Positions 21 to 57,458 of a stretch of 64,000 nt of DNA are shown here, piece by piece; position 1 is the stretch's first letter; each line of letters starts with the position of its first letter. The stretch covers positions 124,001 to 188,000 of IMG/VR virus record IMGVR_UViG_3300017917_003822; one strand, 5' to 3'. The position numbers and the translations under genes are program-made. The notes beneath the pieces were generated by a model. The model did no database searches and had not been told where the DNA came from. It worked only from the letters and a program-made list of their open reading frames with translations.

Positions 21-2984
21 ATGGCTCAATTTCCAATCAATCCCCGAATAGGGCAAGCTTTTCTAGCAGATTCCAAAATATATGTTTGGAGTGGAACTCA
101 GTGGGTTGCGGCACAGGTTGGAGGGACAGGAGACGGATCATCAGGAACCTCTGGAACTAGTGGAGTTGATGGAAATTTTTATGGATCCTCTGGAACCTCT
201 GGAACCTCCGGGGTTAATGGATCCAGTGGAACAAGTGGTACACCGGGATCTTCTGGAATATCAGGATCTTTCGGAACAAGTGGATCTAGTGGAACATCAG
301 GATCTACCGGAAGTCCAGGATCTTCTGGGTCTAGTGGATCTTCTGGTGCTAATGGTTCGTCTGGAACATCAGGAATTAATGGATCCAGTGGAACAAGTGG
401 CTCGAATGGATCATCAGGAACTTCTGGATCTAGTGGAAGCAGCGGAACTTCAGGCACTAGAGGATCTAGTGGAACTTCGGGTTCTTCGGGAACATCTGGT
501 GCTAATGGTTCTTCAGGAACATCTGGATCTAATGGATCTTCGGGTGTCAGTGGAATTAATGGTATAGATGGAACTTCTGGATCTAGTGGAACTTCAGGTA
601 CTAGAGGATCTAGTGGAACTTCTGGTTCTTCAGGAACATCTGGTGCTAATGGTTCTTCAGGAACCTCTGGTGCTAACGGTTCATCGGGTTCATCGGGAGT
701 TAGTGGAATTAATGGTGTTGATGGAACCTCAGGATCTAGTGGAAGTAGCGGAACTTCAGGTACTGGCGGATCGAGTGGATCTTCGGGTTCTTCCGGAACA
801 TCTGGCTCTAATGGTTCTTCAGGAACATCTGGTGCTAATGGTTCATCGGGATCTTCGGGTGTCAGTGGAATTAATGGTGTTGATGGAACTTCAGGATCTA
901 GCGGTACTTCTGGTGTTAATGGCTCTAGTGGAACATCCGGTTCATCAGGATCGTCAGGAACCAGTGGAATCACCGGATCGTCGGGATCTAGTGGATCTTC
1001 GGGTGTCAGTGGAATTAATGGTGTTGATGGAACTTCAGGATCTAGCGGTACTTCTGGTGTTAATGGATCTAGTGGTACTTCGGGATCTGGTGGATCGAGT
1101 GGAACTTCAGGATCTGGTGGATCTAGTGGAACTTCGGGATCTAGAGGATCTTCAGGAACCAGTGGGACAAGTGGATCCTCAGGGTCTAGTGGAGATTCTG
1201 GCTCTAGTGGAACATCCGGTTCATCAGGATCGTCAGGAACCAGTGGAATCACTGGATCGTCGGGATCTAGTGGATCGTCGGGTGTCAGTGGAGTTAATGG
1301 TGTTGATGGAACCTCAGGATCTAGTGGTACCTCTGGTGTTAATGGATCTAGTGGTACTTCGGGATCTGGTGGATCGAGTGGAACTTCAGGATCTAGAGGA
1401 TCTTCGGGAACCAGTGGAACCAGTGGATCTTCAGGATCTAGTGGAGCTTCTGGATCTAGTGGTACCTCCGGTTCTAGTGGTTTATCAGGATCTAGTGGAA
1501 CTTCGGGATCTAGAGGATCTTCGGGAACCAGTGGAACCAGTGGATCTTCAGGATCTAGTGGATCTTCAGGAGTCAGCGGGGTTAACGGTGTTGATGGTTC
1601 TTCCGGATCCAGTGGAACATCCGGAAGTAACGGAACTCCGGGTTCTTCAGGTTCTTCAGGTTCTTCAGGTTCTTCAGGTTCTTCAGGTTCTTCAGGAACT
1701 TCGGGATCTAGAGGATCCAGTGGAACATCTGGTATAAACGGTTCTTCCGGCTCTTCGGGAACGTCAGGGTCCAGTGGAACATCAGGGACAAGAGGAACTA
1801 GCGGAACATCTGGTATAAGTGGAAACGACGCATCTAATTCAGGGAGATGGGAATATTCAAATTCGATTGCACCGACCAATCCAGGCACCAGCAGATTCTG
1901 TACAAATAGTTCTTCTCTAGGATCTGTTAATGTATTAAGTATTAGTATTTACGACATAAACTCGGTGGATTACACTAAATGGTTTCAAGCATCTGACACA
2001 TTGGAAAACAATGGATATCCGCTTTATTTACAGGTAACCGAGGTTGGATCCAATAGTATTATTGCAATCTTCCAAGTTAAGAAGGTCAATGATAATTCCA
2101 CTTATTTTGATATTGAATTTACTGGAACCCTGGCATTTAACGGAACTCTAAGTGGAGGAAAAATATACACGATTTCGTGGGTCTATAATGGAATAAACGG
2201 ATCTTCGGGAACATCAGGTATTAACGGAACCCCAGGTTCCAGTGGATCATCAGGAACTTCAGGTTCTCGTGGATCCTCGGGAACATCAGGTATTAACGGA
2301 ACCCCAGGTTCTAGTGGATCGTCGGGAACTTCGGGTTCTCGGGGATCTTCAGGAACCAGTGGAATTAGCGGATCCCCGGGATCTAGTGGATCCTCCGGTG
2401 TCAGTGGGGTTAATGGTGTAGACGGATCATCAGGAACCAGTGGAATTAGCGGATCCCCTGGATCTAGTGGATCATCTGGAACTTCTGGAACAAGTGGGGT
2501 TTCTGCAACTATAAATAGTAATGCTGACAACAGGGTAATTACTGGTAGTAACACTGCAGGGCAATTAAATGGTGAATCTGCTTTTACTTTCAATGGAACC
2601 ACCGCATATGTGAATGGAGCTCTTGGTGTAGGTACTGATACACCCACAACGGTTGGTTTAATTAGAGCAACGAACGATGTCGTAGCTTATTATTCCTCCG
2701 ATGAAAGACTGAAGGAAAACAAAGAAATTATCAAGAACCCACTGGATAAGCTAAATGGTCTTTCCGGATATGAGTTTGATTGGATACCTAAAAAGGGAAT
2801 ACATGAAAATGAAGGTAGAGACATCGGTGTAATTGCTCAGGAGGTCGAGAAAGTTTTTCCTCAGTTGGTTCAAACAAGAGATAATGGTTATAAAGCTGTA
2901 AAATACGAAAAGCTAGTGCCCGTTCTGATTGAGGCAATTAAGGAACTTCGAAATGAAATTGAAATTTTGAAGAGAAGAGATTAA
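21..2984 (+). CDS. Collagen-like Ser/Gly-rich tail fibre/spike with C-terminal intramolecular chaperone (peptidase S74-like)
   Basis: Long G-X-Y runs (GSS/GTS/GIN/GVD), a non-repetitive insert around aa 610-725, and a C-terminal SDERLKEN...GVIAQEVEKVFP...V.YEKLVPVLIEAIKEL typical of S74 chaperones. Confidence 0.85.
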   Translation: MAQFPINPRIGQAFLADSKIYVWSGTQWVAAQVGGTGDGSSGTSGTSGVDGNFYGSSGTSGTSGVNGSSGTSGTPGSSGISGSFGTSGSSGTSGSTGSPGSSGSSGSSGANGSSGTSGINGSSGTSGSNGSSGTSGSSGSSGTSGTRGSSGTSGSSGTSGANGSSGTSGSNGSSGVSGINGIDGTSGSSGTSGTRGSSGTSGSSGTSGANGSSGTSGANGSSGSSGVSGINGVDGTSGSSGSSGTSGTGGSSGSSGSSGTSGSNGSSGTSGANGSSGSSGVSGINGVDGTSGSSGTSGVNGSSGTSGSSGSSGTSGITGSSGSSGSSGVSGINGVDGTSGSSGTSGVNGSSGTSGSGGSSGTSGSGGSSGTSGSRGSSGTSGTSGSSGSSGDSGSSGTSGSSGSSGTSGITGSSGSSGSSGVSGVNGVDGTSGSSGTSGVNGSSGTSGSGGSSGTSGSRGSSGTSGTSGSSGSSGASGSSGTSGSSGLSGSSGTSGSRGSSGTSGTSGSSGSSGSSGVSGVNGVDGSSGSSGTSGSNGTPGSSGSSGSSGSSGSSGSSGTSGSRGSSGTSGINGSSGSSGTSGSSGTSGTRGTSGTSGISGNDASNSGRWEYSNSIAPTNPGTSRFCTNSSSLGSVNVLSISIYDINSVDYTKWFQASDTLENNGYPLYLQVTEVGSNSIIAIFQVKKVNDNSTYFDIEFTGTLAFNGTLSGGKIYTISWVYNGINGSSGTSGINGTPGSSGSSGTSGSRGSSGTSGINGTPGSSGSSGTSGSRGSSGTSGISGSPGSSGSSGVSGVNGVDGSSGTSGISGSPGSSGSSGTSGTSGVSATINSNADNRVITGSNTAGQLNGESAFTFNGTTAYVNGALGVGTDTPTTVGLIRATNDVVAYYSSDERLKENKEIIKNPLDKLNGLSGYEFDWIPKKGIHENEGRDIGVIAQEVEKVFPQLVQTRDNGYKAVKYEKLVPVLIEAIKELRNEIEILKRRD
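130..2510 (+). repeat. Coding 9/18-nt periodic repeats (GGATCTAGTGGAACTTCA-like) with larger duplicated blocks
   Basis: Visible recurrent ggatctagtgga/ggaacttc units; blocks such as GSSGVSGINGVDGTSGSSGTSG recur several times. Confidence 0.9.
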
Positions 2985-16012: not shown

Positions 16013-17293
16013 ATGAGTAAAAAGAATAAAACAAAGAAAAAATCAACGCCTATTAAGATGGCTTCGCCAATTAAGAGTCCGCTGATTATTAAGCCTCAGA
16101 TTTTATCAAAGGAGCAAACAATCAGCCTATGTTTGGTTATGATTGTTAAGGATGAGGAGGACACAATCAGAAGATGTCTTACAGCTGTTGCCCCTTATAT
16201 TAAATATTGGGTTATTGTTGATACCGGATCTTCAGATAACACAATTCAGGTTATCAACGAAACAATGCAGGAATTAAATATTCCGGGTGAACTACACGAG
16301 AGGCCTTGGGTCAACTTTGAAGTTAATAGAACCGAGAGTTTGAATCTGGCTAAAGGTAAATGTGACTATAGATGGATCATAGATGCCGACGATACTTTCT
16401 ATGTGGACCAGCCAGGGCTTAATCCATTTGCTGGACTTGATACAACTCCTGATTGTTATCAAATATCATATAAATTAAATGCCCTCCAATATCACAGAGC
16501 ACAGCTAGTTAGATCAAGCCAGAATTGGGTCTATAAAGGGGTTCTTCACGAATATCTGTTTTTGGATGAGCCTAATGCACAACCAACTCAGGCACAAATT
16601 AATGGATGTCATGTCGTAGCTGACATTTCTCCGCTTAAAAGAGCTTCTAGCTTGGAGGAAAAATACGCTAACGATGCGAAGATACTTGAGGATGCACTAG
16701 TCAAAGAGCCTGATAATGATAGGTATATGTTTTACCTAGCACAAAGTTATAGAGACTCTAGCCAGTTAGAAAAAGCTATAGAAGCTTATAAGAAAAGAGT
16801 TGCTATGGGTGGATGGGAGGAAGAAGTCTACTATTCTCTTTATATGATTGGTAAAATCAGCGAAAAAATGGGTGTTGATGATGAGACCGTTACCAATTTA
16901 TATTCTAAGGCATGGGAGTATAGACCATCCCGATTAGAGGCTGTGTTTCATGTTATGAGAAAGCTCAGAGATCAAAAAAGATATTTGGTTGCTTTTGCTT
17001 ATGGAGACGTTGCTATAAAAACAAAAGGAACCGCTGATATTCTATTCATAGAACCAGAGATCTGGCAATGGAGACTTCTGGATGAGTATTCTCTGGCTGC
17101 TTATTATATAGGAAATCCTGAAATTGCGGTTGAAAAAACATCAGCCATTATAAATGCACCCTTCTTTAAAGATATTGCAATGGAAGAGCAAAATAGGCTT
17201 AGAAAAAATTTATCATTCTATCAGAAAGGTGCACAAGAAAAGGCTAAAAAAATACAAGAAATGCAACAGTTACAGAAGCTACAGGGGAAATAA
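16013..17293 (+). CDS. GT2-family glycosyltransferase with C-terminal TPR repeats
   Basis: LCLVMIVKDEE, VIVDTGSSDNT, IIDADD; RYMFYLAQSYRD and EEVYYSLY TPR-like helices. Confidence 0.88.
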   Translation: MSKKNKTKKKSTPIKMASPIKSPLIIKPQILSKEQTISLCLVMIVKDEEDTIRRCLTAVAPYIKYWVIVDTGSSDNTIQVINETMQELNIPGELHERPWVNFEVNRTESLNLAKGKCDYRWIIDADDTFYVDQPGLNPFAGLDTTPDCYQISYKLNALQYHRAQLVRSSQNWVYKGVLHEYLFLDEPNAQPTQAQINGCHVVADISPLKRASSLEEKYANDAKILEDALVKEPDNDRYMFYLAQSYRDSSQLEKAIEAYKKRVAMGGWEEEVYYSLYMIGKISEKMGVDDETVTNLYSKAWEYRPSRLEAVFHVMRKLRDQKRYLVAFAYGDVAIKTKGTADILFIEPEIWQWRLLDEYSLAAYYIGNPEIAVEKTSAIINAPFFKDIAMEEQNRLRKNLSFYQKGAQEKAKKIQEMQQLQKLQGK

Positions 17294-43332: not shown

Positions 43333-43389
43333 ATTTACGAAATTTTATCAACAAATAACACTATAAATTCTTATTAAAAGAAAAATTAA

Positions 43390-45342
43390 GTGAGAATAGC
43401 CTACATAGTACCACATCTTTCAACCGGTGGGATGCCTGAATATCTCAGAAATAAGATAGAAAAGTTAAGAGAAGTTTCCGATGTTTGGGTTTTTGAAAAA
43501 TTTAAAGAACCGGTCTATAATACCATTCGTTTAAGAATTGAGAAAATAATAGGTGAGGAGAGGATAATAACATGGGGAAAGGATCAAACTGGATCTTTCT
43601 TGAATAAGATTTTTGAAATAAATCCTGACATTATTCATTTTGAGGAACCATGCGAACAATTTGTCGATGATTTCCTTCTCGATGTAATATATTCAGGTGA
43701 TAGAAAATATAAAATATTTGAGACCCTTCATGACTCCTCGATTAAACCGGAGGAGAAAAGATACCTTCCTGATAAGTTTATCGTTGTTAGTCCATGGCAG
43801 GTTTATTTACTTAAAGACCTTGGTGTCCCGATTGAGATTATTGAACACGAGCTTAGTGAAAAAATTCTACCGTCGAGAGAAGAATGTATGAATCAACTTG
43901 GGTTGGATCCCAATAAAAAACATGTTGTTCAGATAGGTATTTTTACCCCAAGAAAAAATCAGAAGGAAACATCTGAAATTGCTAGATTTTTACCTGACGT
44001 TCAATTCCATTTTGTTGGTACATTGGCCGATAATTATGCTTGGTATTGGGAACCGATAGTTAGAGGTCTTCCGCCAAATTGTAAAATATGGGGTGAAAGA
44101 GATGATGTTGATCTTTTTTATAAGGCATGTGATCTCGTCATATTTCCATCAGTAGAATTGTTTAATGACAAGGAGACAAGTCCACTAGTAATTAGAGAAA
44201 CCATCAACATCGGAACCAAATTACTACTAAGAAACTTACCTGTTTATGTTGGAATGTATCAGGAATCTGATAATGTCACATTTATGAAAAACACAGCAAT
44301 TGAAAATGCTAATCTAATAAAAAGTACACTAAATATGGAACTCACCGGAACAAATAACAGAAACTTAGAAATCAGATTTAATCCCGAAAATAATGAGATT
44401 TCATTCTCCTTTTTGAGAAATGATTTGGTAGGTAACTTCTGGATCTCAGTTAAGGATGTTGATTCAAACGCATGTATCTATGCTTTCCAAATAAATTTGG
44501 AAGGTCCATGGCAGAATTTCTGGTGCATTCCGATACCTAAAGAATTTTATGATTTCGGCGGTGACAAGAATTTCACTGGATTCAAATTAGAAATTTATGT
44601 GGATAAAATGGATTCTTCTCCACTCATTTCTGAGAATTTCATAATCAAGAAAAGGATTAATAAAAAGATGATACCTAGCAACCCTTTTATAAATTTCGAT
44701 CCAGTTTTCGTTAACTACTCTCAATTTTTTATCGACGGTATCTATAATTTATTCTTTGCTGGACAGAGAATAAAAACAGCTATCGACATTGGTGCTAATG
44801 TTGGTCTTTTTACTGAATGGGTGCTTGATAGATTCGGCAGTGATACGGAGGTGATCTCGGTGGAACCTAACGAAACCGCAGCAAGGGCTTTCCAGGAGAT
44901 TCATAAAGATAAGAATAATGTGAGATTAGCAAAATATGCTCTTTCGGACAAATCGGGTGAATTCATAGAGATGCTGGTAAACCCGGACAACAGCTTGATT
45001 TCAAGTATAGAAGGGACAGGTGAAGGATACAGTGAAAGGCAAACCGCTGAAACCATCACCCTGATGGATCTGATGGAGAAATATAACATGACAGGGGCTG
45101 ATCTATTAAAAGTTGACATAGAGGGAGCTGAATATCAGATGTTTGATGCTGTGACTTCGGATGATCTAAGAAGATTTAAGAATCTCCTGATAGAATTCCA
45201 TAATAATGATGGTCGAGCGACACAGCTTATTAAGAAAATCAGGGAGGCTGGATTTTATATCGATCTGAGAGATGATGACACTAGATACACAACGGACGAG
45301 AATAATGATAGAGGTACAATATTCGCAACAAGAATAGATTAA
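43390..45342 (+). CDS. GT4-like glycosyltransferase fused to an FkbM-family methyltransferase
   Basis: PHLSTGGMP, RKNQ, E..PLVIRE; IDIGANVG, SVEPN, LLKVDIEGAE. Confidence 0.88.
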   Translation: MRIAYIVPHLSTGGMPEYLRNKIEKLREVSDVWVFEKFKEPVYNTIRLRIEKIIGEERIITWGKDQTGSFLNKIFEINPDIIHFEEPCEQFVDDFLLDVIYSGDRKYKIFETLHDSSIKPEEKRYLPDKFIVVSPWQVYLLKDLGVPIEIIEHELSEKILPSREECMNQLGLDPNKKHVVQIGIFTPRKNQKETSEIARFLPDVQFHFVGTLADNYAWYWEPIVRGLPPNCKIWGERDDVDLFYKACDLVIFPSVELFNDKETSPLVIRETINIGTKLLLRNLPVYVGMYQESDNVTFMKNTAIENANLIKSTLNMELTGTNNRNLEIRFNPENNEISFSFLRNDLVGNFWISVKDVDSNACIYAFQINLEGPWQNFWCIPIPKEFYDFGGDKNFTGFKLEIYVDKMDSSPLISENFIIKKRINKKMIPSNPFINFDPVFVNYSQFFIDGIYNLFFAGQRIKTAIDIGANVGLFTEWVLDRFGSDTEVISVEPNETAARAFQEIHKDKNNVRLAKYALSDKSGEFIEMLVNPDNSLISSIEGTGEGYSERQTAETITLMDLMEKYNMTGADLLKVDIEGAEYQMFDAVTSDDLRRFKNLLIEFHNNDGRATQLIKKIREAGFYIDLRDDDTRYTTDENNDRGTIFATRID

Positions 45343-45344
45343 TA

Positions 45345-47669
45345 ATGAGAATAGCTCAAGTAACACCAGGCAACATACCAATTCCAACTAAGGGGTGGGG
45401 TGCTGTTGAAAAAATAATATGGGAGTATACCAAGGTTTTGAGAAATCTAGGTCACGAGGTTGAAGTACTTTATGCTGATGATGTTATACCCGGTGAGTGG
45501 GATGTTGTTCATGTTCACATGGCAAATTTAGCCTTGATCTTAAAGGAGAGAGGTATACCATATGTTTTCTCGCATCACGATCATCACGCATATCATTTCG
45601 GTAAGAACTCGGATGTTTATAAACAGAATTTAGAGGCAATAAAAGGGTCACAACTTTCTTTTGTTCATGCTAAATATCTGGTTGAATATTTTGGTTCACC
45701 TAAGAATCTCAGATATTTGAATCACGGAGCAAATACTAAGGATTATGGATTTTTTGACAGATCCAGAAATGTAGAAGAAGGTAATATTAGACTTCTGATG
45801 ATGGCAAACAATGGGCTTGGTGGAAATCATATGTATGACAGGAAGGGATTTATTCCTGGGGTAGAAGCTGCAAGATTACTTGGATTACCTATCACCATAA
45901 TTTGTCCTAAATCCGGTAATTACGATCTTATCTCTAGCATTAGTCCATATGATAAGATGAATGTTCTATATGATTTAGAATATGAGGATACGCTAACTGA
46001 GATGTCAAATCACGAGATATTCCTTAATCCCTCTATGTTAGAAGCAGGACATCCAAATCTAACAGTAACCGAGTCTATCGCCAGAGGGGTACCTGTAGTC
46101 GGAACAGCGGAGGAGGAGATACCGGGGATCAGAAGAATACCACTTCCAACAGATTTAACCGTTGATGTCAATGATCTTGTTGATGGAATCTCTGAAGTCA
46201 TATCCAAATACCCGTCATATGTTCTCGAATGCAGGGATCAGAGAGAAATTTATTCCTGGGAGGTTGTGGTGTCCAGGATGTTAATGGACTACACAAATCA
46301 TTTGAATATAAGTCAGAAAAGTCTTCTTCTTGACAGCTATAAATCAACAACCAAGAGAGAAGTTTCAAAAACACCTCATAGCGGGATCTATTCCTGGTTT
46401 AAATCTAGACCTTTCTTGTATAAGTCAACGAAGACTAATTATGGAACTTCCGTTTCTTTTATTGACAAAATCACTGGTGAAATCATACATAAATGCAATT
46501 TCCCGACAGAACCTAGATCCTGGATACGTGCCATCTTTCCATCGGATAGGTATATTGATTGGAAAATAGTTGTTAGAGAAGGGGCAAAAATAATACATGA
46601 GAATGAGATGGATCTCCGAAATCATCACGTTCTGGTTAGAGGAGCCAACTCGGAGGACTATCAAAAACTAATTGAGTTTACCAATCTAACTCATTGTATA
46701 CTAACCGTTGATTCTGATAGTGATCTTCCATTTTTTAAATTAAAAGAAAACACAAACGATCATTATTATCTTGAGTTAAATATGAGCCAGATTTTGGACT
46801 TCTTCATAGAGAAGCCTAAGGTACAAAAAAGAACTCTGATAAACTTATCTCCTGAGTCTCTAGGTGACAATATTGCGTTCGTCCCATATGCAAACGAATA
46901 TGGTAAAAAAATTGGGGAGATAGTGGATGTTCACTGTAAGTATGCATTCCTATTTGATGGAGTTTATGAATACATTAACTTTATTGACAACCCGGATTCT
47001 CAAAAATACACAGACTATATTAACATCGATTATCTTTTCGATGTTCCGCTTCAGAGAGGATTCTCCGACCAATTGCTTCTAAATTATGAGGAGATTCGTC
47101 CAAGGGTAAAAGAACCTTCAGGTCAACCACAAAAAATTACCGGGAAATATATCTGTTTTTCCATGCACAGTACTGCTCAGGCTAAGCATTGGAATAATAA
47201 CAATTCTTGGTCTAAATTGTGTGATGAGCTTAAAAAGGTTGGTCTTAAGGCAGTTTGTATCGACAGACATTACTCGTTTGGCATAGAGGGTCATTGGAAC
47301 GAGATACCATCCAACTGCATAAATATGACTGGAGGAGACCTGAATAGTATGTCATTACTCATTCAAAATTGTGAGTTTTTCATAGGATTATCAAGCGGAT
47401 TGTCTTGGTTGGCACATGGTCTAGGTAAGAAAGTCGTTATGATCTCCGGGGTAACATCCAAAGATAATGAGTTTACCAAAGATTGCATCAGATTGCACAG
47501 AGAAGATGTTTGTAATTCGTGTTTCAATAAACCAGATCAATATAAGTTCGACAAGGGAGATTGGCTTTGGTGTCCTGTTCACAAAGGAACGCCAAGAGCT
47601 TTTGAATGCACAAAGAAGATCTCAGCCAAACAGGTTATGGATTCACTGAAAGCAAATAAGTGGATATAG
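45345..47669 (+). CDS. GT4-like domain fused to an Aah/TibC-type (autotransporter) O-heptosyltransferase-like domain
   Basis: N-terminal IP.KGWGAVEK, EAGHP; C-terminal SLGDNIAF, HSTAQAKHWN, FIGLSSGLSWLAH, C.SC...WLWCP.H...ECTK. Confidence 0.8.
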   Translation: MRIAQVTPGNIPIPTKGWGAVEKIIWEYTKVLRNLGHEVEVLYADDVIPGEWDVVHVHMANLALILKERGIPYVFSHHDHHAYHFGKNSDVYKQNLEAIKGSQLSFVHAKYLVEYFGSPKNLRYLNHGANTKDYGFFDRSRNVEEGNIRLLMMANNGLGGNHMYDRKGFIPGVEAARLLGLPITIICPKSGNYDLISSISPYDKMNVLYDLEYEDTLTEMSNHEIFLNPSMLEAGHPNLTVTESIARGVPVVGTAEEEIPGIRRIPLPTDLTVDVNDLVDGISEVISKYPSYVLECRDQREIYSWEVVVSRMLMDYTNHLNISQKSLLLDSYKSTTKREVSKTPHSGIYSWFKSRPFLYKSTKTNYGTSVSFIDKITGEIIHKCNFPTEPRSWIRAIFPSDRYIDWKIVVREGAKIIHENEMDLRNHHVLVRGANSEDYQKLIEFTNLTHCILTVDSDSDLPFFKLKENTNDHYYLELNMSQILDFFIEKPKVQKRTLINLSPESLGDNIAFVPYANEYGKKIGEIVDVHCKYAFLFDGVYEYINFIDNPDSQKYTDYINIDYLFDVPLQRGFSDQLLLNYEEIRPRVKEPSGQPQKITGKYICFSMHSTAQAKHWNNNNSWSKLCDELKKVGLKAVCIDRHYSFGIEGHWNEIPSNCINMTGGDLNSMSLLIQNCEFFIGLSSGLSWLAHGLGKKVVMISGVTSKDNEFTKDCIRLHREDVCNSCFNKPDQYKFDKGDWLWCPVHKGTPRAFECTKKISAKQVMDSLKANKWI

Positions 47670-47702: not shown

Positions 47703-48296
47703 ATGAAAAGAATTTTATTTATTTTTCTACTTCTTCCTCTGATATCCTTCTCCCAGATTTTAAGGGATTCGGTTAGAGTAAAAAACGAGATCTATGAGGT
47801 GATTTACAGTGAAAAATTGGAACAACCCAGATGGATCAGATACGCCGTTCAATGTCCAAACGGAACAGCTTCTAGATCTGGAATGGACTTCTATACCAAT
47901 GACACGATAAAAACTTCTAGTCACGAAGATTATGTAAAAAATGTTTATGATAAGGGGCATTTAGCACCAGCCGCTGATTTTAATTGTACCAGAGAGCTAC
48001 TATACAAGACTTTTAGCTATTTAAACTGCGCTTTACAGAATCAGTATCTCAACAGAGGAGTTTGGAGAATGTTGGAGGAGTATGAAAGAGAATTAGCTAA
48101 GAAGGAACCAGTTATAGTGGAGATAGAGGTAGTTTTCGACTCAAATTCATTAAAACTGCCTACCGGGGCAACAGTTCCTAATGGATTCTATAAAACAATT
48201 ATTCTGGAGAGGTCCAAAAAAACCATTAAATATTATTTTCCAAACGAAGCTCCAAAGAAGGCCAGGTTCTTTGACTATGAAATATCGAAGAAATAA
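47703..48296 (+). CDS. Secreted DNA/RNA non-specific endonuclease (NucA/EndA type)
   Basis: Signal peptide ...ISFS-Q; YDKGHLAPAAD, LNRGVWRMLE, VPNGFYK. Confidence 0.9.
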   Translation: MKRILFIFLLLPLISFSQILRDSVRVKNEIYEVIYSEKLEQPRWIRYAVQCPNGTASRSGMDFYTNDTIKTSSHEDYVKNVYDKGHLAPAADFNCTRELLYKTFSYLNCALQNQYLNRGVWRMLEEYERELAKKEPVIVEIEVVFDSNSLKLPTGATVPNGFYKTIILERSKKTIKYYFPNEAPKKARFFDYEISKK

Positions 48297-48907: not shown

Positions 48908-49540
48908 ATGAAGGTAGAATTTGCTGAATCATTTGGGGATTCAATTAAGAGACTAATCAGAAGGGAAACTTGGTGGTACAAGACATACTCAACTCTTAGA
49001 TACGATCTCCCACACTTTTTCAAAAACATATATCTATTCAGAAAGAATCTTTGGAACCACAGATGGTGGGATTATCGATTCACACTCGATCTTATGAAGA
49101 CCTCATTGGAAATAATGGAGAAGGGTATGCACAACGGACTGGAGGTACATGAATCTAGGGATAAGAAAATTGCCAAAATGCAAAGGGTTATCCAGATACT
49201 AGATAATATCCAGAAGGATTCCTATATAGAAATGGCAGAATCGGAATTGGGTGATCTTGTGATGAGAGACTGGGAATTTGAGGATATCCCAGATAAACCT
49301 GGATTTTCTAGATTGGTTGATAATGAAACCGAGGCAGAAAAGAAACACAACAGAAGGGTTTTTAGTAGGGCAAGAAAACTGGAAGAATCCGAATGGAATG
49401 AATTGTGGGATATTCTGAAAGGACCTGACCATAGGAAATTCAAAAAGCATTTGAAGACTCTAAGTGAGGAGGAGAGAAATAAAGATTCCGTTTATTATGA
49501 ATGGTTTGATGGATCTGGGTTAAACGGATGGTGGGATTGA
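48908..49540 (+). CDS. Hypothetical protein (common in Bacteroidota phages)
   Basis: ORF ending GLNGWWD. Confidence 0.65.
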   Translation: MKVEFAESFGDSIKRLIRRETWWYKTYSTLRYDLPHFFKNIYLFRKNLWNHRWWDYRFTLDLMKTSLEIMEKGMHNGLEVHESRDKKIAKMQRVIQILDNIQKDSYIEMAESELGDLVMRDWEFEDIPDKPGFSRLVDNETEAEKKHNRRVFSRARKLEESEWNELWDILKGPDHRKFKKHLKTLSEEERNKDSVYYEWFDGSGLNGWWD

Positions 49541-50166
49541 TGAACAAAGTTAAGTACACAGAGAAACAAATTCAGGATGCTTTAGAAAAGCATTATGATA
49601 AGAGTGGAATAAAGTACACAGTCAGTAATTTATATCTGTTTAAGTACAATTGGGAAACTGATTTTCTCGTTGTCCAGAAGGCTTCCAAATACTGCTACGA
49701 AATAGAAATAAAAACTAGCAGAGCGGATTTCTTTAATGATTTCAAGAAAACAGAGAAACACACGATACTTAAAGAGGGTACACACCAGGTAAAAAAATAT
49801 CGTTATAAATATGACCCGGTGACTAAAAGAAACACCCCGGACCATTATTACGAGACTCAGGAATGGAAATTCAGGCCCAATAGATTCTATTATTGCGTAC
49901 CTGAAGATCTAATAAAACCTGAAGAGGTTCCTGATTATGCAGGTCTGATGTATATTAACGATACAAATAAAATCCGAATAGTAAAGGAAGCAACATTTCT
50001 ACATAAAGAAAAACTTGAGTTAATTAAGCCTCTCTGTGACAAGTTTTATTACTACTGGAAAAATGCAAGATCTGCCAATCTTATACTCGAGAAAAAGATT
50101 AATGAATACAAAGAAACTTACAATATAAGCGAATCTAAAAAACCTAAAAAATTCAAAGAAAAATGA
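49540..50166 (+). CDS. PD-(D/E)XK nuclease-like protein (MmcB-like)
   Basis: ETDFL...YEIEIKTSRADF, FYYCVP. Confidence 0.7.
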   Translation: MNKVKYTEKQIQDALEKHYDKSGIKYTVSNLYLFKYNWETDFLVVQKASKYCYEIEIKTSRADFFNDFKKTEKHTILKEGTHQVKKYRYKYDPVTKRNTPDHYYETQEWKFRPNRFYYCVPEDLIKPEEVPDYAGLMYINDTNKIRIVKEATFLHKEKLELIKPLCDKFYYYWKNARSANLILEKKINEYKETYNISESKKPKKFKEK

Positions 50167-50921
50167 TCTGGAACCTTCTAATCAAAAACACAACTCCCTA
50201 CAAAGGAAAACTTAAAGTTAAATTTGAAAAATCACCGTATTACATAGGTTCTTCTTCAGGCAAGTTAAATAAAGTACATCTGAATCTGGGGTTCACTAAA
50301 TTGGTATCCAGAATGATGCCATTCCAAAATTTGGATGGATGGATGGCCGACCCTAAGAAAATCGAGACGATAGAAAAATACACCGGAGGAAAGATAGCTT
50401 CGCATGTTGTTGATAATAGACCTTCCGATGAATTCACTTTACACAATTCATTTCTAACATCCGACAAAAAATATATCGGTGATATAGAGAGGGCCTGGTG
50501 GTATTACACTTCGAATTTGGTCGTGTGCGATGATTACCCACATGGTGTTGCAATAAAAGTTAATCCGGATCTTTTTAAAGGTAATCATAATCCAGTAGAT
50601 TCATACTCAGCTTCATATATCGAGGGGTATTACGGGTACACACACAGGGGTGGATCACTATTTAAAATAGGAGACAGATTATTTGATGCTGACTATGTAC
50701 CAGTTGAAAGTGACTATCCCGAGTGGCAGTGGGCTGGTTGGCAAATAAAATATGATGAATCTCTCAAGAAAGCAAAGAAGGAGAATGATGAATTCACGAT
50801 CAAATATCTCGTTGAGGATGGGGTTGGTTCATTTATACCATTCAGGCTAAGAGGGAGAAAGGAAATAGAAAATCTCGAAGAAGCATTACAAGCAGCAATA
50901 AACCTATCAAAATACCTTTAA
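50163..50921 (+). CDS. Hypothetical protein
   Basis: ORF in operon. Confidence 0.6.
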   Translation: MIWNLLIKNTTPYKGKLKVKFEKSPYYIGSSSGKLNKVHLNLGFTKLVSRMMPFQNLDGWMADPKKIETIEKYTGGKIASHVVDNRPSDEFTLHNSFLTSDKKYIGDIERAWWYYTSNLVVCDDYPHGVAIKVNPDLFKGNHNPVDSYSASYIEGYYGYTHRGGSLFKIGDRLFDADYVPVESDYPEWQWAGWQIKYDESLKKAKKENDEFTIKYLVEDGVGSFIPFRLRGRKEIENLEEALQAAINLSKYL

Positions 50922-52473: not shown

Positions 52474-53115
52474 ATGGAAGATTTAGATAAAAAATACCAG
52501 TCTCTTTTGCAAGATGTTCTTAATAATGGGGTAACAGAGGAGAAACTTTTAGAAATAAAAGAATACTCAGAGAAACAAATTGAGAAAATTAGACAAGAGG
52601 AAGAAAATGAAATCAGGAGGAAAAATTCAGTAAAAAATAAAACTAAATTATCTCAGCTTACATCAGATGATAGAATTTTAGGGATAAGAATTTCATGGAA
52701 TGATGATTCTAAAGGAGTTAAGATAGATGAATTAGGTAATAGTTGGTCTGTTGATATAATTGGGTATTGTGATGTTAGAGGGTATGAGGATAAGAAAAAG
52801 AGAAAAAGTGACTATCATAGAATATCAATTAGTCATAAAAAAGAAGCGTTTGGCCACGCAGTATCACTGACTGATGAGGAATCAGAAAATCCATATTTAC
52901 TAGTTATTGATACTATGGGAAATGGGTACGATTCTTTTTTCACTTTATCACCTGAGACTTGGGAAGAAGATTTAATGAAGGCTTTAATCGACCAAAAAGA
53001 ATGGAGAATTAGACAGCATCATAGAGAAATTTCAATCTTAAGAAAAAAAGTTGGAGCTTTCTTAAAAAGTAAAAATAAAATCAATAAATTCATAAAGAAT
53101 GAACAATCTAGATAA
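52474..53115 (+). CDS. Hypothetical protein beginning with a copy of the ThyA N-terminus
   Basis: MEDLDKKYQSLLQDVLNNGVT matches the next gene's start. Confidence 0.65.
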   Translation: MEDLDKKYQSLLQDVLNNGVTEEKLLEIKEYSEKQIEKIRQEEENEIRRKNSVKNKTKLSQLTSDDRILGIRISWNDDSKGVKIDELGNSWSVDIIGYCDVRGYEDKKKRKSDYHRISISHKKEAFGHAVSLTDEESENPYLLVIDTMGNGYDSFFTLSPETWEEDLMKALIDQKEWRIRQHHREISILRKKVGAFLKSKNKINKFIKNEQSR

Positions 53116-54319
53116 ACAATACCAAGCACTTCTTCAAGACATTCTTGATAATGGGGTAACAAAACAAGACCGTACAGGAACGGGAACAATCTCAGTATTT
53201 GGAAGACAAATCAGACATAAAATGTCAGAAGGGTTTCCACTTCTTACAACTAAGAAAATGCCATTCAAAACCATCGTAACAGAACTTCTTTGGTTCTTAC
53301 GAGGTGATACAAACATCAAATACTTGGTTGATAATAATTGCCATATTTGGGATGGAGATGCTTATAAGAATTATTGCAAATCATTTGAAAATCAATCAAT
53401 TTTGGATAAGTATTCGTTTGATACAGACCCAATCACAATAGAGATGTTTGTTGAGAAAATCAAAACAAATAATGAGTTTGCTAAAAAGTGGGGTGAATTA
53501 GGTCCAATTTACGGTAAGCAATGGAGAAGTTGGGTAAGAGGTGTTGATTATGATGTTGATTATGAAAATGGAATACAGGATGAAATAGACCAAATAACAA
53601 ACTTAATCAACGACCTTAAAACAAATCCAGACTCAAGACGATTAATGGTTAATGCTTGGAATGTTGGAGAATTAGACCAAATGGTTCTTCCACCTTGTCA
53701 TTATGGATTTCAAGTTTATACAAGAGAGTTGAGTGATAGTGAAAGAGCAAAATTATACGAACAGAAAACAAATGTAGACACTTCTTTCTTTCCTGTTCTT
53801 AGAGAAACATTAGATTTTCACAACATTCCAACCAGAGCAATCTCTTTAATGTGGAATCAACGTTCAGTAGATACATTCTTAGGTTTACCATTTAATATTG
53901 CATCGTATGGGCTATTGCTTGAAATTATTGCAAAGGAAGTAAATATGGTTCCTGATGAATTGATTGGTAATTTAGGTGATGTTCATTTATATTCAAATCA
54001 TATTGAACAAGCAAAAGAGCAAATTGGTCGAGAGCTTACATGGGAAGAAAAAATCCAATGGGTAATGAAGAACACTGATGTCGAGCTTGAGAACCTGTAC
54101 ATAACTGAAGCAGCTGCTGCTTTAGAAGCAACAACTAGGTGGCCATACCCTCTACCAACATTAAAAGTCAGTTGGTATATCGATAATTGGAATACTCCAG
54201 AAGCTAAAGAAGTTAGGAAAAACGAGTTTGACGCTTATATAAGACAAATGAGGACTAGTGATTTCATTCTTGAAAATTATAAATCACACCCAGCAATTAA
54301 AGCACCTTTAAGCAATTAA
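53099..54319 (+). CDS. thyA: Thymidylate synthase (with insertions)
   Basis: DRTGTGT, FPLLTTKK, ELLWFLRG, GPIYGKQWR, LPPCH, RSVDTFLGLPFN, HLYSNH. Confidence 0.97.
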   Translation: MNNLDKQYQALLQDILDNGVTKQDRTGTGTISVFGRQIRHKMSEGFPLLTTKKMPFKTIVTELLWFLRGDTNIKYLVDNNCHIWDGDAYKNYCKSFENQSILDKYSFDTDPITIEMFVEKIKTNNEFAKKWGELGPIYGKQWRSWVRGVDYDVDYENGIQDEIDQITNLINDLKTNPDSRRLMVNAWNVGELDQMVLPPCHYGFQVYTRELSDSERAKLYEQKTNVDTSFFPVLRETLDFHNIPTRAISLMWNQRSVDTFLGLPFNIASYGLLLEIIAKEVNMVPDELIGNLGDVHLYSNHIEQAKEQIGRELTWEEKIQWVMKNTDVELENLYITEAAAALEATTRWPYPLPTLKVSWYIDNWNTPEAKEVRKNEFDAYIRQMRTSDFILENYKSHPAIKAPLSN

Positions 54320-57014: not shown

Positions 57015-57458
57015 ATGGAAAAAAGAAAAAGAGGCGTTATAGCCGGTAATTTCGATGTTATACACCCGGGTTACATCCTAATGTTTAATGAGTGCAAGAA
57101 AAACTGCGAACATCTCTACGTTCTTCTTCATGAAGATCCTAGTTTAGAAAGACCGGAGAAATTAAAACCAGTCCTATCGGTTGACGAGAGAATGTCCATA
57201 CTGGAATCTCTGAGACAGGTACATAGGGTTATAACATACAGGAGAGAATCTGATCTGTATGAAATACTGAGACAGCTTTCCCCCGAGGTTAGATTTCTGG
57301 GTGATGATTATATAGGGAGAGGATTTACAGGGGACGATTTACCGATTGATATTCATTATCTCAACCGAGATCATGGGTGGTCAACGACGAAATATAAGAA
57401 TTTAATAGCTGATAGCGTTAGGAATAATTCCTATCAGGAAACAAAGGATCCGGTTTAA
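57015..57458 (+). CDS. Cytidylyltransferase (TagD/RfaE-like nucleotidyltransferase)
   Basis: GNFDVIHPGY, ER..IL, GDDY, STT. Confidence 0.88.
   Translation: MEKRKRGVIAGNFDVIHPGYILMFNECKKNCEHLYVLLHEDPSLERPEKLKPVLSVDERMSILESLRQVHRVITYRRESDLYEILRQLSPEVRFLGDDYIGRGFTGDDLPIDIHYLNRDHGWSTTKYKNLIADSVRNNSYQETKDPV

What the first reader, a model, noticed from the sequence alone, without database searches (positions are those of the whole stretch)
43390..47669. GT4-FkbM and GT4-Aah/TibC fusions: candidate virion protein O-glycosylation system
Seen: two adjacent multidomain enzymes, the second with the Cys-rich C-terminus and SLGD/GLSSGLSW motifs of autotransporter heptosyltransferases. Elsewhere in the window are a GT2-TPR, a DxD protein (32073) and a TagD/RfaE-like nucleotidyltransferase (57015). 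Known: Aah/TibC transfer heptose from ADP-heptose to Ser residues in Gly/Ser-rich repeats. Inference: the phage glycosylates and methylates its Ser-rich fibre or capsid, or remodels the host surface for exclusion.
Basis: partly seen in the sequence, partly recalled or inferred. Interest (0 to 1): 0.72.

Follow-up and report, generated by a model that had tools for sequence, protein, structure and literature searches.

The report
Phage collagen-fibre glycosylation enzyme pair
A 270-kb phage carries two adjacent multi-domain sugar-transferring enzymes, one built around a relative of the bacterial protein-heptosylating enzyme TibC. Across many unrelated phages such enzymes sit in the same genomes as, and often next to, giant collagen-like fibres made almost only of glycine, serine and threonine, so they most likely coat those fibres with methyl-capped sugars.

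Summary
ORF1 (43390-45342) is a GT4, a beta-sandwich and an FkbM methyltransferase. ORF2 (45345-47669) is a GT4 joined to a near-complete TibC/Aah-like module. That module keeps the catalytic Asp, the phosphate- and sugar-binding residues and all four iron-finger Cys. It lacks the adenine-reading Arg and the hydrophobic thumb tip of TibC.

New evidence:
- The genome encodes GmhA-like, HldE-kinase-like and RfaE-II-like enzymes, three of the four steps that make ADP-D,D-heptose.
- It has a second, unfused GT4 + TibC-like pair between a collagen-like fibre gene and the neck and terminase genes.
- The ORF1...ORF2 module is collinear in 72 of 80 IMG/VR loci.
- 16 of 17 carrier contigs encode collagen-like proteins of up to 5,316 aa. 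In 11 of the 12 sampled, 77-93% of X/Y positions are Ser or Thr.
- Of records sampled only for (G-[ST]-[ST])x8, 24 of 72 carry a TibC-like domain, at a median distance of 8.6 kb. The figure is 0 of 36 for a mirrored non-S/T collagen pattern (p = 1e-5).

Best reading, at confidence 0.6: cytoplasmic O-glycosylation and methyl capping of Ser/Thr-rich collagen-like virion fibres. No transfer has been shown. DNA or host-glycan acceptors are not excluded, and the donor sugar of ORF2 is uncertain.

The parts
43390..45342 (+). ORF1, 650 aa. GT4 retaining glycosyltransferase (aa 1-315), beta-sandwich (aa 326-418), FkbM-family SAM-dependent O-methyltransferase (aa 440-650).
   Evidence: PF00534, PF05050 and TIGR01444 match. 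The AF2 model has pLDDT 86, and its GT-B domain matches HepE, BshA and MshA. The EX7E motif (E262/E270) and the SAM motif (D466, G468, G472) are invariant in 27 homologues. There is no TM segment.
45345..46310 (+). ORF2 N-terminal GT4-type GT-B domain (aa 1-322).
   Evidence: The fold matches BshA, MshA, PimA and other GT4 enzymes at Z 25-27 over aa 1-322. E233-AGHPNL...E243 and many His and Asp residues are invariant in 26 homologues. The sequence match to Pfam is only weak (PF13439, 17.7 bits).
46377..47669 (+). ORF2 TibC/Aah-like module (aa 345-774): eight-stranded beta domain, GT9-type catalytic lobes and a four-Cys iron-finger insertion.
   Evidence: TIGR04414 scores 199.9/200.8 bits. TibC 4rap matches at E 6e-36. 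The structural alignment covers aa 345-774 against TibC 51-390, Z 26.8, 27% identity. D508, T610, K614, W688 and C723/726/743/755 are conserved. The R286 equivalent is M669 and the thumb tip is G649-H650.
21..2984 (+). Candidate acceptor: a 987-aa collagen-like fibre with 223 GXY triplets, 77% Ser/Thr at X/Y positions and almost no Pro or charged residues, ending in a C-terminal Peptidase_S74 intramolecular chaperone.
   Evidence: Translation. PF01391 scores 303 bits and PF13884 62.7 bits. Composition.
57015..57458 (+). Small nucleotidyltransferase of 147 aa, RfaE/HldE domain-II-like. It is the putative heptose-1-phosphate adenylyltransferase that supplies the donor.
   Evidence: TIGR02199 at E 3.5e-15 is the best match, with TagD next at 2e-12. 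phrog_7878 matches at E 5e-30 over the full length. It is present in 5 of 6 near-complete genomes that carry the ORF2 family.
16013..17293 (+). GT2-family glycosyltransferase of 426 aa. It may be a further member of the glycosylation toolkit, but no link was tested.
   Evidence: PF00535, E 2e-8.

Best explanation
ORF1 and ORF2 are soluble, cytoplasmic, multi-domain enzymes. Together they carry four activities: a TibC-like O-glycosyltransferase, two GT4 retaining glycosyltransferases and an FkbM O-methyltransferase.

Proposed mechanism (all steps inferred):
1. Phage GmhA-like, HldE-kinase-like and RfaE-II-like enzymes, with a host GmhB, raise the pool of ADP-heptose.
2. A TibC-like domain puts the first sugar on Ser/Thr hydroxyls of the phage's (Gly-Ser/Thr-Ser)n collagen-like fibre proteins, such as window 21-2984 and the truncated one at the start of the contig.
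3. The GT4 domains extend the glycan with hexoses.
4. The FkbM domain caps it by O-methylation.

The genome carries two paralogous sets. An unfused GT4 + canonical TibC-like pair lies in the structural module. ORF1/ORF2 form a fused, diverged pair whose TibC-like domain may use a different nucleotide sugar.

The product would be a densely O-glycosylated, mucin-like collagen fibre on the virion. The sugars would substitute for the missing Pro/Hyp and charge pairs in stabilising, hydrating or shielding it.

Shown here: domain identities, conserved catalytic residues, the pathway genes, and the genomic linkage. Inferred: the acceptor, the donor, the order of steps and the biological role.
For: 1. 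Domain and fold assignments with invariant catalytic residues.

2. By sequence the C-terminal module matches TibC/Aah-type protein heptosyltransferases rather than LPS heptosyltransferases: TIGR04414 at 6e-59 against heptosyltransferase I at 0.003. It has the family-specific iron finger and beta domain.

3. The phage's own heptose-pathway genes:
- GmhA-like, NF001628, 8e-70.
- HldE domain I-like, TIGR02198, 6.5e-94.
- RfaE-II-like nucleotidyltransferase.

4. A second TibC-like gene (TIGR04414, 254.9 bits, above the cutoff, Arg286 retained) overlaps a GT4 that is 43% identical to ORF1's GT4. This pair lies between a collagen-like fibre gene with a prolyl-hydroxylase-like oxygenase and the neck and terminase genes.

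5. The ORF1...ORF2 order is conserved in 72 of 80 IMG/VR loci. Seven of the 8 exceptions are truncated upstream. The inserts between the two genes are sugar-tailoring enzymes: methyltransferases, a PglD-like acetyltransferase and a DegT aminotransferase.

6. Fusion variants link the domains (Rosetta-stone logic): GT4(ORF1-type)-TibC in a 66-kb phage, and one 1,226-aa protein with a GT4 domain and a TibC-like module, annotated 'methyltransferase FkbM' in its record, in Microcystis phage Mel-JY01.

7. Association with Ser/Thr collagen-like fibres:
- 16 of 17 carrier contigs have collagen-like ORFs of up to 5,316 aa. In 11 of the 12 sampled fragments X/Y positions are 78-93% Ser/Thr with about 0% Pro.
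- 25 of 80 loci selected for a TibC-like gene have such a run within 10 kb, and 4 are adjacent.
- 24 of 72 records sampled only by the (G-[ST]-[ST])x8 pattern carry a TibC-like domain. This includes 6 of 10 near-complete genomes. The median distance is 8.6 kb.
- 0 of 36 records sampled by a mirrored non-S/T collagen pattern carry one. Fisher p = 1.2e-5.

8. The association spans lineages. TerL identity to this phage runs from 90% down to undetectable, and genome sizes from 66 to 548 kb.

9. Neither enzyme has a TM segment.
Against: - No biochemical or proteomic evidence exists. The acceptor is inferred from co-occurrence and neighbourhood, which could reflect a shared 'fibre/host-recognition' hypervariable region rather than an enzyme-substrate pair.
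- In this genome ORF1/ORF2 lie 42 kb from the fibre gene, among non-structural genes (A1-like DNA transfer protein, endonuclease).
- ORF2's TibC-like domain lacks Arg286 (adenine contact; R286A cripples TibC) and the hydrophobic thumb tip needed for the TibC dodecamer.
- GmhA and the kinase are present in only 2 of 6 near-complete carrier genomes.
- Mel-JY01 has the enzyme but no (G-[ST]-[ST])x6 run.
- 4 of 10 near-complete genomes with Ser/Thr-rich collagen-like repeats lack a TibC-like domain.
- The complex prediction of the TibC-like module with a fibre peptide gave no answer.
Confidence: 0.6

Rival explanations
1. The enzymes glycosylate some other protein, not the collagen-like fibres. 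Candidates are the capsid or tail proteins, as in mycobacteriophages, or a host protein. The linkage to fibres then only reflects co-location in structural or host-recognition regions.
For: TibC-family enzymes act on proteins. Mel-JY01 carries the fused enzyme next to a 'structural protein' but has no Ser/Thr collagen run. ORF1/ORF2 are not adjacent to the fibre gene in this genome.
Against: The Ser/Thr-collagen pattern specifically predicts a TibC-like domain (24 of 72 against 0 of 36) at kilobase distances, across lineages. No other Ser-rich repetitive candidate was seen in the window.
Confidence: 0.15
2. These are auxiliary 'LPS-type' genes that remodel a host envelope glycan (LPS core, O-chain or capsule) during infection, for example for superinfection exclusion. 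This is how such phage GT clusters are usually read.
For: GT4, GT9 and FkbM domains and rfaE/gmhA genes are typical of LPS and O-antigen loci. The literature reads phage GT clusters near tail-fibre genes this way (PMC7029224). The inserts in related loci (DegT, PglD-like, CmcI-like) are also typical of polysaccharide loci.
Against: The C-terminal module matches the protein-modifying TibC/Aah family, with its iron finger, and not WaaC/WaaF. No flippase, polymerase, ligase or polyprenyl-phosphate GT was seen next to the module in the ORF lists and called-gene tables examined. The enzymes have no membrane segments. This reading does not explain the specific link to Ser/Thr collagen genes.
Confidence: 0.12
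3. The enzymes hypermodify phage DNA, putting heptose or hexose, then methylated, on a hydroxymethyl-pyrimidine to evade restriction.
For: Phage gene clusters with a GT-B enzyme, a cytidylyltransferase and a kinase make heptosyl-5hmC (10.1101/2023.12.21.572611). This genome has a second, divergent thymidylate-synthase-like gene with the catalytic Cys (35747-36541). A DNA/RNA non-specific endonuclease lies directly downstream of ORF2.
Against: The known DNA heptosyltransferase is T4 beta-GT-like, not TibC-like. No Tet/JBP dioxygenase or C5-methyltransferase was found. The divergent ThyA-like gene is absent from 2 of 6 near-complete carrier genomes and from all small carriers tested. A DNA acceptor does not explain the collagen linkage.
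Confidence: 0.07
4. The enzymes build a free or lipid-linked methylated oligo- or polysaccharide, or modify a small molecule, unrelated to the virion.
For: The closest GT4 structural neighbours include small-molecule and polysaccharide enzymes: BshA, MshA, the methylmannose-polysaccharide mannosyltransferase and HepE.
Against: These are fold-level resemblances only. This reading explains neither the TibC-like module nor the collagen association.
Confidence: 0.05

Closest known systems
Bacterial autotransporter heptosyltransferases (BAHT: TibC, AAH/Aah; TIGR04414; PDB 4RAP/4RB4)
   Same: GT-B/GT9-type catalytic lobes with an N-terminal beta domain and a four-Cys iron-finger insertion. The catalytic Asp (D110 to D508), T226, K230, W305 and F368 are conserved. 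Ser at the P300/S294 stereoselectivity position matches AAH. The enzyme is cytoplasmic and soluble. In this reading it hyper-modifies Ser/Thr in a long repetitive, rod-like substrate.
   Different: - It is encoded by phages and fused behind a GT4 domain.
- No autotransporter partner is present. The candidate substrate is a collagen-like triple helix, not a beta-helix.
- Arg286 (adenine contact) is replaced by M/V/I/A throughout the fused family.
- The thumb tip F265/V266 is G-H here, and the hairpin is deleted in the stand-alone paralogue, so the dodecameric ring is doubtful.
- The HMM score is borderline, 199.9 against 200.
Chlorovirus PBCV-1 A064R (and A111/114R) multi-domain capsid-glycan enzymes
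   Same: Virus-encoded, cytoplasmic, multi-domain polypeptides. They combine two glycosyltransferase activities with a C-terminal methyltransferase that caps the glycan of a virion protein (PMC9614988).
   Different: A064R is a eukaryotic-virus enzyme. It has GT-A-like or novel GT domains, builds N-linked glycans on the major capsid protein, and shows no sequence relationship to ORF1 or ORF2.
Glycosylated collagen-like proteins: Bacillus anthracis BclA and Mimivirus L230 with its collagen-like proteins
   Same: Collagen-like GXY filaments on a particle surface carry O-linked glycans. The BclA glycan ends in a 2-O-methylated sugar, anthrose (PMC6222408, PMC7793302). Mimivirus encodes both the collagen-like proteins and the enzyme that glycosylates them (PMC9614988).
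   Different: BclA triplets are Pro/Thr-rich (own knowledge), and L230 glucosylates hydroxylysine. Here the repeats are almost pure G-S/T-S, and the candidate initiating enzyme is of the BAHT type. That BclA and L230 use unrelated glycosyltransferases was not compared here.
Mycobacteriophage virion glycosylation (Freeman et al. 2023, cited in PMC12619734)
   Same: Phage-encoded glycosyltransferases O-glycosylate the phage's own virion proteins in the host cytoplasm.
   Different: The targets are C-terminal tails of capsid and tail-tube subunits. No TibC-like, FkbM or collagen-like component has been reported (own knowledge, beyond the sentence).
Phage DNA sugar hypermodification clusters (Pyle et al., 10.1101/2023.12.21.572611)
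   Same: Phage GT-B enzymes act together with a cytidylyltransferase-like enzyme and a sugar kinase. Heptose is one of the transferred sugars.
   Different: Those GTs are T4 beta-GT-like or GT-A. They are linked to 5hmC-forming enzymes and act on DNA.

Membership tests
BAHT / TIGR04414 (TibC, Aah) | Score at or above the curated NCBIfam cutoff of 200 bits | tested here: inconclusive
   ORF2 scores 199.9 bits by hmmscan and 200.8 bits in the six-frame genome search. The stand-alone paralogue G000:7532-8734 scores 254.9 bits and clearly passes.
BAHT / TIGR04414 (TibC, Aah) | TibC protomer fold: beta-barrel, atypical N-lobe and C-lobe | tested here: met
   The AF2 model aligns over aa 345-774 with TibC 51-390 at Z 26.8, 306 residues and 27% identity.
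BAHT / TIGR04414 (TibC, Aah) | Catalytic base Asp110 and donor-binding Thr226, Lys230 and Trp305 | tested here: met
   D508, T610, K614 and W688. They are invariant or nearly invariant in 26 and in 16 homologues.
BAHT / TIGR04414 (TibC, Aah) | Arg286, which contacts adenine N1 and underlies ADP-sugar specificity | tested here: not met
   The equivalent is M669 in ORF2 and M/V/I/A in 26 of 26 fused homologues. It is retained as Arg in the stand-alone paralogue.
BAHT / TIGR04414 (TibC, Aah) | Four-Cys iron-finger motif (C339, C342, C358, C370) | tested here: met
   C723, C726, C743 and C755 are invariant. Iron binding itself is not testable here.
BAHT / TIGR04414 (TibC, Aah) | Beta-hairpin thumb with a hydrophobic tip (F265/V266) that builds the dodecamer | tested here: not met
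   The tip is G649-H650 and the second position is variable. The hairpin is deleted in the stand-alone paralogue.
BAHT / TIGR04414 (TibC, Aah) | Paired with an autotransporter substrate (TibA, AIDA-I) | tested here: not met
   This is a phage genome. No autotransporter was seen near either copy.
BAHT / TIGR04414 (TibC, Aah) | Transfers heptose from ADP-heptose to Ser of a protein | not testable with these tools
   Only indirect evidence is available: phage GmhA-, HldE-I- and RfaE-II-like genes.
FkbM methyltransferase (TIGR01444 / PF05050) | Score above the cutoff and an intact SAM-binding motif | tested here: met
   85.1 bits against 37.7, and 56.7 against 22.7. D466, G468 and G472 are invariant. 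The model shows a Rossmann-type alternation of strands and helices over aa 440-650.
GT4 retaining glycosyltransferases | GT-B fold with the EX7E-type acidic motif | tested here: met
   ORF1 scores 31.7 bits against 26.4 on PF00534, and E262-x7-E270 is invariant. ORF2's N-terminal domain is below the sequence cutoff, but its fold matches at Z about 27, and E233/E243 are invariant with x9 spacing.
Phage DNA glycosyltransferases (T4 beta-GT-like / GT-A hypermodification clusters) | Linked to enzymes that form 5hm-pyrimidines, and a T4 beta-GT-like or TarP-like fold | tested here: not met
   T4 beta-GT does not appear among the matches listed for either model. The best matches are TibC and GT4 enzymes. 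No Tet/JBP dioxygenase or C5-methyltransferase was found. A divergent ThyA-like gene exists, but it is 7 kb upstream and not co-conserved.

The most novel reading that the evidence does not exclude
Many aquatic phages, with genomes of 66 to 548 kb, carry a class of virion appendage that appears undescribed: giant (Gly-Ser/Thr-Ser)n collagen-like fibres of up to about 5,300 residues. These would be hyper-O-glycosylated in the cytoplasm by a modular toolkit built around TibC-like 'iron-finger' glycosyltransferases, GT4 domains and methyltransferases. The dense, methyl-capped glycans would take over the role that Pro/Hyp or charge pairs play in other collagens, giving phages a mucin-like glyco-collagen coat. 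Gene clusters now annotated as 'LPS-related AMGs' in phage tail-fibre regions would then be virion-glycosylation genes.
Probability: 0.4. Interest if true: 0.85.

Novelty: new variant of a known kind. Interest (0 to 1): 0.72.

Why it matters
Virion glycosylation by phage-encoded enzymes has been shown experimentally in only a few systems. BAHT enzymes are known only as partners of bacterial virulence autotransporters.

If the reading is right, three things follow:
- A large phage branch of that family has a new substrate class, collagen-like triple helices. At least 593 IMG/VR contigs and 2,570 cluster representatives carry a TibC-like domain.
- There is an explanation for how Pro-free, charge-free Ser/Thr collagen repeats can exist.
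- It would call for re-examining the many phage 'LPS AMG' glycosyltransferase clusters that lie near fibre genes.

The idea is directly testable by co-expression in E. coli, which makes ADP-heptose. Glycan-coated fibres would also bear on phage adsorption, stability and recognition by hosts or grazers.

Tried and rejected
- **Nearby DNA matches.** Megablast of the two genes against cultured phage genomes found nothing. tblastn found only 5 records.
- **Complex prediction.** The TibC-like module with a 46-aa fibre peptide and ADP gave 'no answer': score 0.00 and partner pLDDT 26. This is evidence neither way.
- **GmhB.** The TIGR01656 search of the genome was empty, so the phosphatase step is assumed to come from the host.
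- **5hmC route.** No Tet/JBP dioxygenase and no C5-methyltransferase were found.
- **Late-promoter idea.** TATAAAT lies 22 nt upstream of ORF1. The motif is only weakly enriched in non-coding DNA: 14 of 82 copies against 10% non-coding sequence. It was not used as evidence.
- **Within-clade control.** TerL relatives at 70-95% identity all belong to one clade, and the members checked carry TibC-like genes. There was therefore no variation to exploit. I used a mirrored-pattern control instead.
- **Heptose genes as universal partners.** Rejected. GmhA and the kinase are present in only 2 of 6 near-complete carrier genomes.
- **The 'DxD protein' at 32073.** No family match, so it is not counted as part of the system.

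Full report
**Setting.** The window is bases 124001-188000 of a single 270,629-bp viral contig that CheckV rates 99% complete. GC content is about 36%, and every sizeable gene in the window lies on the + strand.

The gene content is that of a T4-like jumbo phage:
- a gp23-like protein, gp32, a T4-type TerL and a neck protein;
- ribonucleotide reductase, a family-B DNA polymerase and DnaK.

Host hints point to Flavobacteriia (Bacteroidota). The A1-like DNA transfer protein has its best matches in Maribacter and Flavobacterium phages. A related contig encodes a protein with a T9SS sorting domain. A published lineage of Bacteroidota jumbo phages has DnaK and four core glycosyltransferase families (PMC12619734).

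**Observation.** ORF1 (43390-45342, 650 aa) matches GT4 (PF00534) and FkbM (TIGR01444, 85 bits against a cutoff of 38).

ORF2 (45345-47669, 774 aa) matches TIGR04414, the 'autotransporter strand-loop-strand O-heptosyltransferase' family. The E-value is 5.8e-59. The score is 199.9 bits, essentially at the cutoff of 200. It also matches the TibC crystal chains at E 6e-36.

**Anatomy.** AlphaFold models built on 26-27 homologues have mean pLDDT 86.
- ORF2 aa 1-322 is a GT4-type GT-B domain (BshA, MshA and PimA at Z 25-27).
- ORF2 aa 345-774 superposes on TibC residues 51-390 (Z 26.8, 27% identity), including part of TibC's N-terminal beta-barrel.
- ORF1 is a GT4 domain (aa 1-315), a beta-sandwich (aa 326-418) and an FkbM domain (aa 440-650).

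I mapped the residues that the TibC structure paper found to be functional (PMC4358343):

| TibC residue | Role | ORF2 equivalent | Status |
|---|---|---|---|
| D110 | catalytic base | D508 | conserved |
| T226 | beta-phosphate contact | T610 | conserved |
| K230 | beta-phosphate contact | K614 | conserved |
| W305 | heptose O4 contact | W688 | conserved |
| F368 | thumb interface | F753 | conserved |
| C339, C342, C358, C370 | iron finger | C723, C726, C743, C755 | conserved |
| R286 | adenine N1 contact; basis proposed for ADP specificity | M669 (M/V/I/A in 26 of 26) | replaced |
| F265, V266 | thumb tip; builds the dodecamer | G649, H650 | replaced |

All the conserved residues are invariant or nearly so across homologues. 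The position of TibC P300, which is S294 in AAH, is Ser. The GT4 acidic motifs and the FkbM SAM motif are invariant as well. All four catalytic domains therefore look functional. Neither protein has a membrane segment.

**The heptose supply.** Elsewhere the genome encodes further pathway enzymes:

| Gene | Position | Best match |
|---|---|---|
| GmhA-like isomerase | G000:113718-114320 | NF001628, E 8e-70 |
| HldE domain-I-like heptose-7-P kinase | G000:34225-35199 | TIGR02198, E 6.5e-94 |
| RfaE-II-like transferase | window 57015-57458 | TIGR02199, 3.5e-15; phrog_7878, 5e-30 |
| GalE | G000:224531-225565 | TIGR01179, 340 bits (above cutoff) |
| a second SDR enzyme | G000:196419-197396 | dTDP-glucose dehydratase-like, 111 bits |

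No GmhB was found. Three of the four steps to ADP-D,D-heptose are thus encoded by the phage. All three scores are below the equivalog cutoffs.

**A second, canonical copy.** A genome-wide search with TIGR04414 found a stand-alone TibC-like gene at G000:7532-8734 (400 aa, 254.9 bits, above the cutoff). It aligns with TibC residues 48-376 at E 1e-50. It keeps Arg286, the catalytic residues and the four Cys, but its thumb hairpin is deleted. It overlaps by 10 bp a 321-aa GT4 that is 43% identical to ORF1's GT4 domain.

The gene order at the start of the contig is:
1. a 5'-truncated collagen-like fibre with GSS, GTS and GTP triplets;
2. three genes of unknown function;
3. a 2OG-Fe(II) oxygenase of the prolyl-hydroxylase family (PF13640);
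4. further ORFs of unknown function (401, 107 and 91 aa);
5. the GT4;
6. the TibC-like gene;
7. a neck-like protein and a 260-aa ORF of unknown function;
8. TerL.

The same two enzyme types therefore sit, unfused, inside the morphogenesis module beside a fibre gene.

**Conservation of the module.** ORF2 has more than 1,500 homologues and ORF1 has 720. They are full length at 42-75% identity and lie on contigs of up to about 590 kb. In IMG/VR, 553 contigs encode an ORF2 relative.
- In 72 of the best 80 loci an ORF1 relative lies upstream on the same strand, 0 to 7 kb away. Seven of the 8 exceptions have less than 1.8 kb of upstream sequence.
- The genes inserted between the two encode sugar-tailoring enzymes: CmcI-like, FkbM and other methyltransferases, a PglD-like acetyltransferase, a DegT aminotransferase, a GT2, and one unknown family of about 365 aa.

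This is the pattern of a variable glycan-assembly locus bracketed by two conserved multi-domain enzymes.

The TibC-like domain is very modular. A profile search finds 2,570 cluster representatives of 282-2,033 aa, with the domain at any position and sometimes in two or three copies. Fusion variants tie the parts together:
- GT4(ORF1-type)-TibC in a 66-kb phage;
- one 1,226-aa protein with a GT4 domain and a TibC_1st/GT9 module, annotated 'methyltransferase FkbM' in its record, in the cultured Microcystis phage Mel-JY01. It lies next to a 'structural protein' and about 7 kb upstream of the terminase gene.

**The acceptor.** The window begins with a 987-aa fibre (21-2984). It has 223 GXY triplets with 77% Ser/Thr at X/Y positions, 2% Pro and 4% charged residues. 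It ends in a Peptidase_S74 intramolecular chaperone, which marks it as a virion fibre.

1. *From enzyme to fibre.* Of 17 larger contigs that carry the ORF2 family, 16 have collagen (PF01391) matches. The exception is only 39% complete. The open frames reach 5,316 aa. In 11 of 12 sampled fragments, X/Y positions are 78-93% Ser/Thr with essentially no Pro or charge. Of the 80 loci selected for a TibC-like gene, 25 have such a run within 10 kb, at a median of 3.4 kb. Four are adjacent.

2. *From fibre to enzyme.* I sampled IMG/VR with a DNA pattern for eight consecutive G-[ST]-[ST] triplets. Of the 72 records that could be searched, 24 carry a TibC-like domain. That includes 6 of 10 near-complete genomes. 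The domain lies a median of 8.6 kb from the repeat, and within 16 kb in 20 of 24. One example is a 548-kb genome where the two are 5 kb apart.

3. *Control.* The mirrored pattern encodes G-[HQLDEV]-[HQLDEV] collagen-like runs. It sampled 36 searchable records, and none has a TibC-like domain. Fisher one-sided p = 1.2e-5. The pattern-based counts of carriers in IMG/VR, 553 and at least 593 of about 2.9 million contigs, are lower bounds.

The carriers are not one clade. TerL identity to this phage ranges from 90% to undetectable, and complete genomes range from 66 kb (with inverted terminal repeats) to 548 kb.

A compact example is locus L165. It holds a 1,105-aa GSS-collagen fibre with a Peptidase_S74 domain and, 600 bp away in convergent orientation, a GT4-TibC fusion.

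**Interpretation.** The simplest account is a cytoplasmic O-glycosylation system for Ser/Thr-rich collagen-like virion fibres. A TibC-like domain would initiate on Ser/Thr, the GT4 domains would extend, and FkbM would cap by methylation. The phage's heptose genes would feed at least the canonical TibC-like copy.

The fused ORF2 copy has a hydrophobic residue where TibC reads adenine, so it may have shifted to another donor. That would make sense of keeping two paralogous sets.

Such a composition would not be expected to give a stable collagen helix on its own (general knowledge of collagen). Dense glycosylation offers an explanation. Known parallels are:
- BclA of B. anthracis, a collagen-like filament whose glycan ends in a 2-O-methylated sugar (PMC6222408);
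- Mimivirus L230, which glycosylates the virus's own collagen-like proteins (PMC9614988);
- PBCV-1 A064R, a GT-GT-methyltransferase protein that acts on the capsid glycan.

**Limits and rivals.** Nothing here shows transfer.
- In this genome ORF1/ORF2 are 42 kb from the fibre gene and have non-structural neighbours: an A1-like protein, a zinc-ribbon protein and a signal-peptide-bearing non-specific endonuclease.
- GmhA and the kinase are present in only 2 of 6 complete carrier genomes. The nucleotidyltransferase is present in 5 of 6.
- Mel-JY01 has the enzyme but no Ser/Thr collagen run.
- Four of 10 near-complete Ser/Thr-collagen genomes lack the domain.

The DNA rival is real. Phage clusters with a GT-B enzyme, a cytidylyltransferase and a kinase make heptosyl-5hmC, and this phage has a second, divergent ThyA-like gene with the catalytic Cys. 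Against it:
- that published enzyme is T4 beta-GT-like;
- no Tet/JBP dioxygenase or C5-methyltransferase is present;
- the ThyA-like gene is not co-conserved with the module.

The customary 'host LPS AMG' reading (PMC7029224) is not excluded. It explains neither the BAHT-type module nor the collagen linkage.

I put the fibre-glycosylation reading at 0.6, another protein acceptor at 0.15, a host glycan at 0.12, DNA at 0.07, and a free glycan or small molecule at 0.05.

**Novelty.** No paper in the searchable library combines collagen-like proteins, phages and heptosyltransferases. The enzyme kinds are known, and virion glycosylation is known. New here are a large phage branch of the BAHT family, its fusion architectures, and its specific genomic coupling to giant Ser/Thr-only collagen-like fibres. 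I rate this a new variant of a known kind, with interest 0.72.

Noticed in passing
G000:C1:3807-4394 (outside the window; L320:3807-4394): A 195-aa 2OG-Fe(II) oxygenase of the prolyl-4-hydroxylase family (PF13640, E 1.6e-13). It lies 2 kb downstream of a collagen-like fibre gene whose triplets include many G-T-P and G-S-P. The phage may also hydroxylate proline in its collagen.
   Followed up: partly
window 35747-36541 and 53099-54319: Two thymidylate-synthase-family genes. One is canonical but long (406 aa, 306 bits). The other is very divergent (264 aa, 19.5 bits on Pfam, phrog_160 at 6e-25) yet keeps the catalytic Cys. It could be a pyrimidine hydroxymethylase, which would mean modified DNA.
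   Followed up: partly
window 47703-48296: A DNA/RNA non-specific endonuclease (PF01223, E 1e-27) with a hydrophobic, signal-peptide-like N-terminus lies directly downstream of ORF2. A homologue lies within 10 kb of the ORF2 gene in only 8 of the 80 IMG/VR loci.
   Followed up: partly
window 49528-50921: A SduA_C (Shedu nuclease C-terminal)-like protein is followed by a Tad6-like protein, a type I Thoeris inhibitor family (E 7e-15). This looks like a small counter-defence region just downstream of the glycosylation genes.
   Followed up: no
window 4664-6553, 26676-28133, 29090-30514 and 55291-56400: The phage encodes DnaK (862 bits), a RimK-like 'S6 glutaminyl transferase' homologue, a protein matching phrog_850 ('RNA-binding protein', E 7e-152) and an M42 aminopeptidase. 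This is an unusual set of host-like functions for a phage.
   Followed up: no
G007:C1 about 150-161 kb (L112, L160); G009 (L107); G006; G004: Related phages encode enormous collagen-like open frames of 5,316, 3,345, 2,712 and 2,603 aa made almost entirely of G-S/T-S triplets. Many contigs of this group, including this one, begin or end inside such repeats, so assemblies break there and the true fibre lengths are underestimated.
   Followed up: partly
P0241, P0242, P0243 and P0245: Some proteins of 924-1,032 aa contain three TibC-like domains in tandem. Others of up to 2,033 aa carry the domain in the middle of the chain. The family's domain shuffling is much wider than the two architectures seen in this genome.
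   Followed up: no
L322 (Microcystis phage Mel-JY01, PP395634.1:4750-8430): A cultured cyanophage has one 1,226-aa protein with a GT4 domain and a TibC_1st/GT9 module. Its record annotates it only as 'methyltransferase FkbM'. It lies beside a 'structural protein' and about 7 kb upstream of the terminase gene. It is a tractable system, although its genome has no Ser/Thr collagen run.
   Followed up: partly
G000:C1:120253-122313 (L019:8253-10313): A 686-aa protein just upstream of the window combines an RNA-ligase-like N-terminal region with a HIGH-motif nucleotidyltransferase segment (NMN-adenylyltransferase-like). Mel-JY01 has a 639-aa 'cytidylyltransferase like protein' that also matches PF01467, near its own fused enzyme.
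   Followed up: no
window 43360-43375 and elsewhere: A T4-late-promoter-like TATAAAT lies 22 nt upstream of ORF1. It also precedes the 308-aa ORF at 32073, the gp23-like gene and the stand-alone TibC-like gene. Genome-wide enrichment in non-coding DNA is weak.
   Followed up: partly
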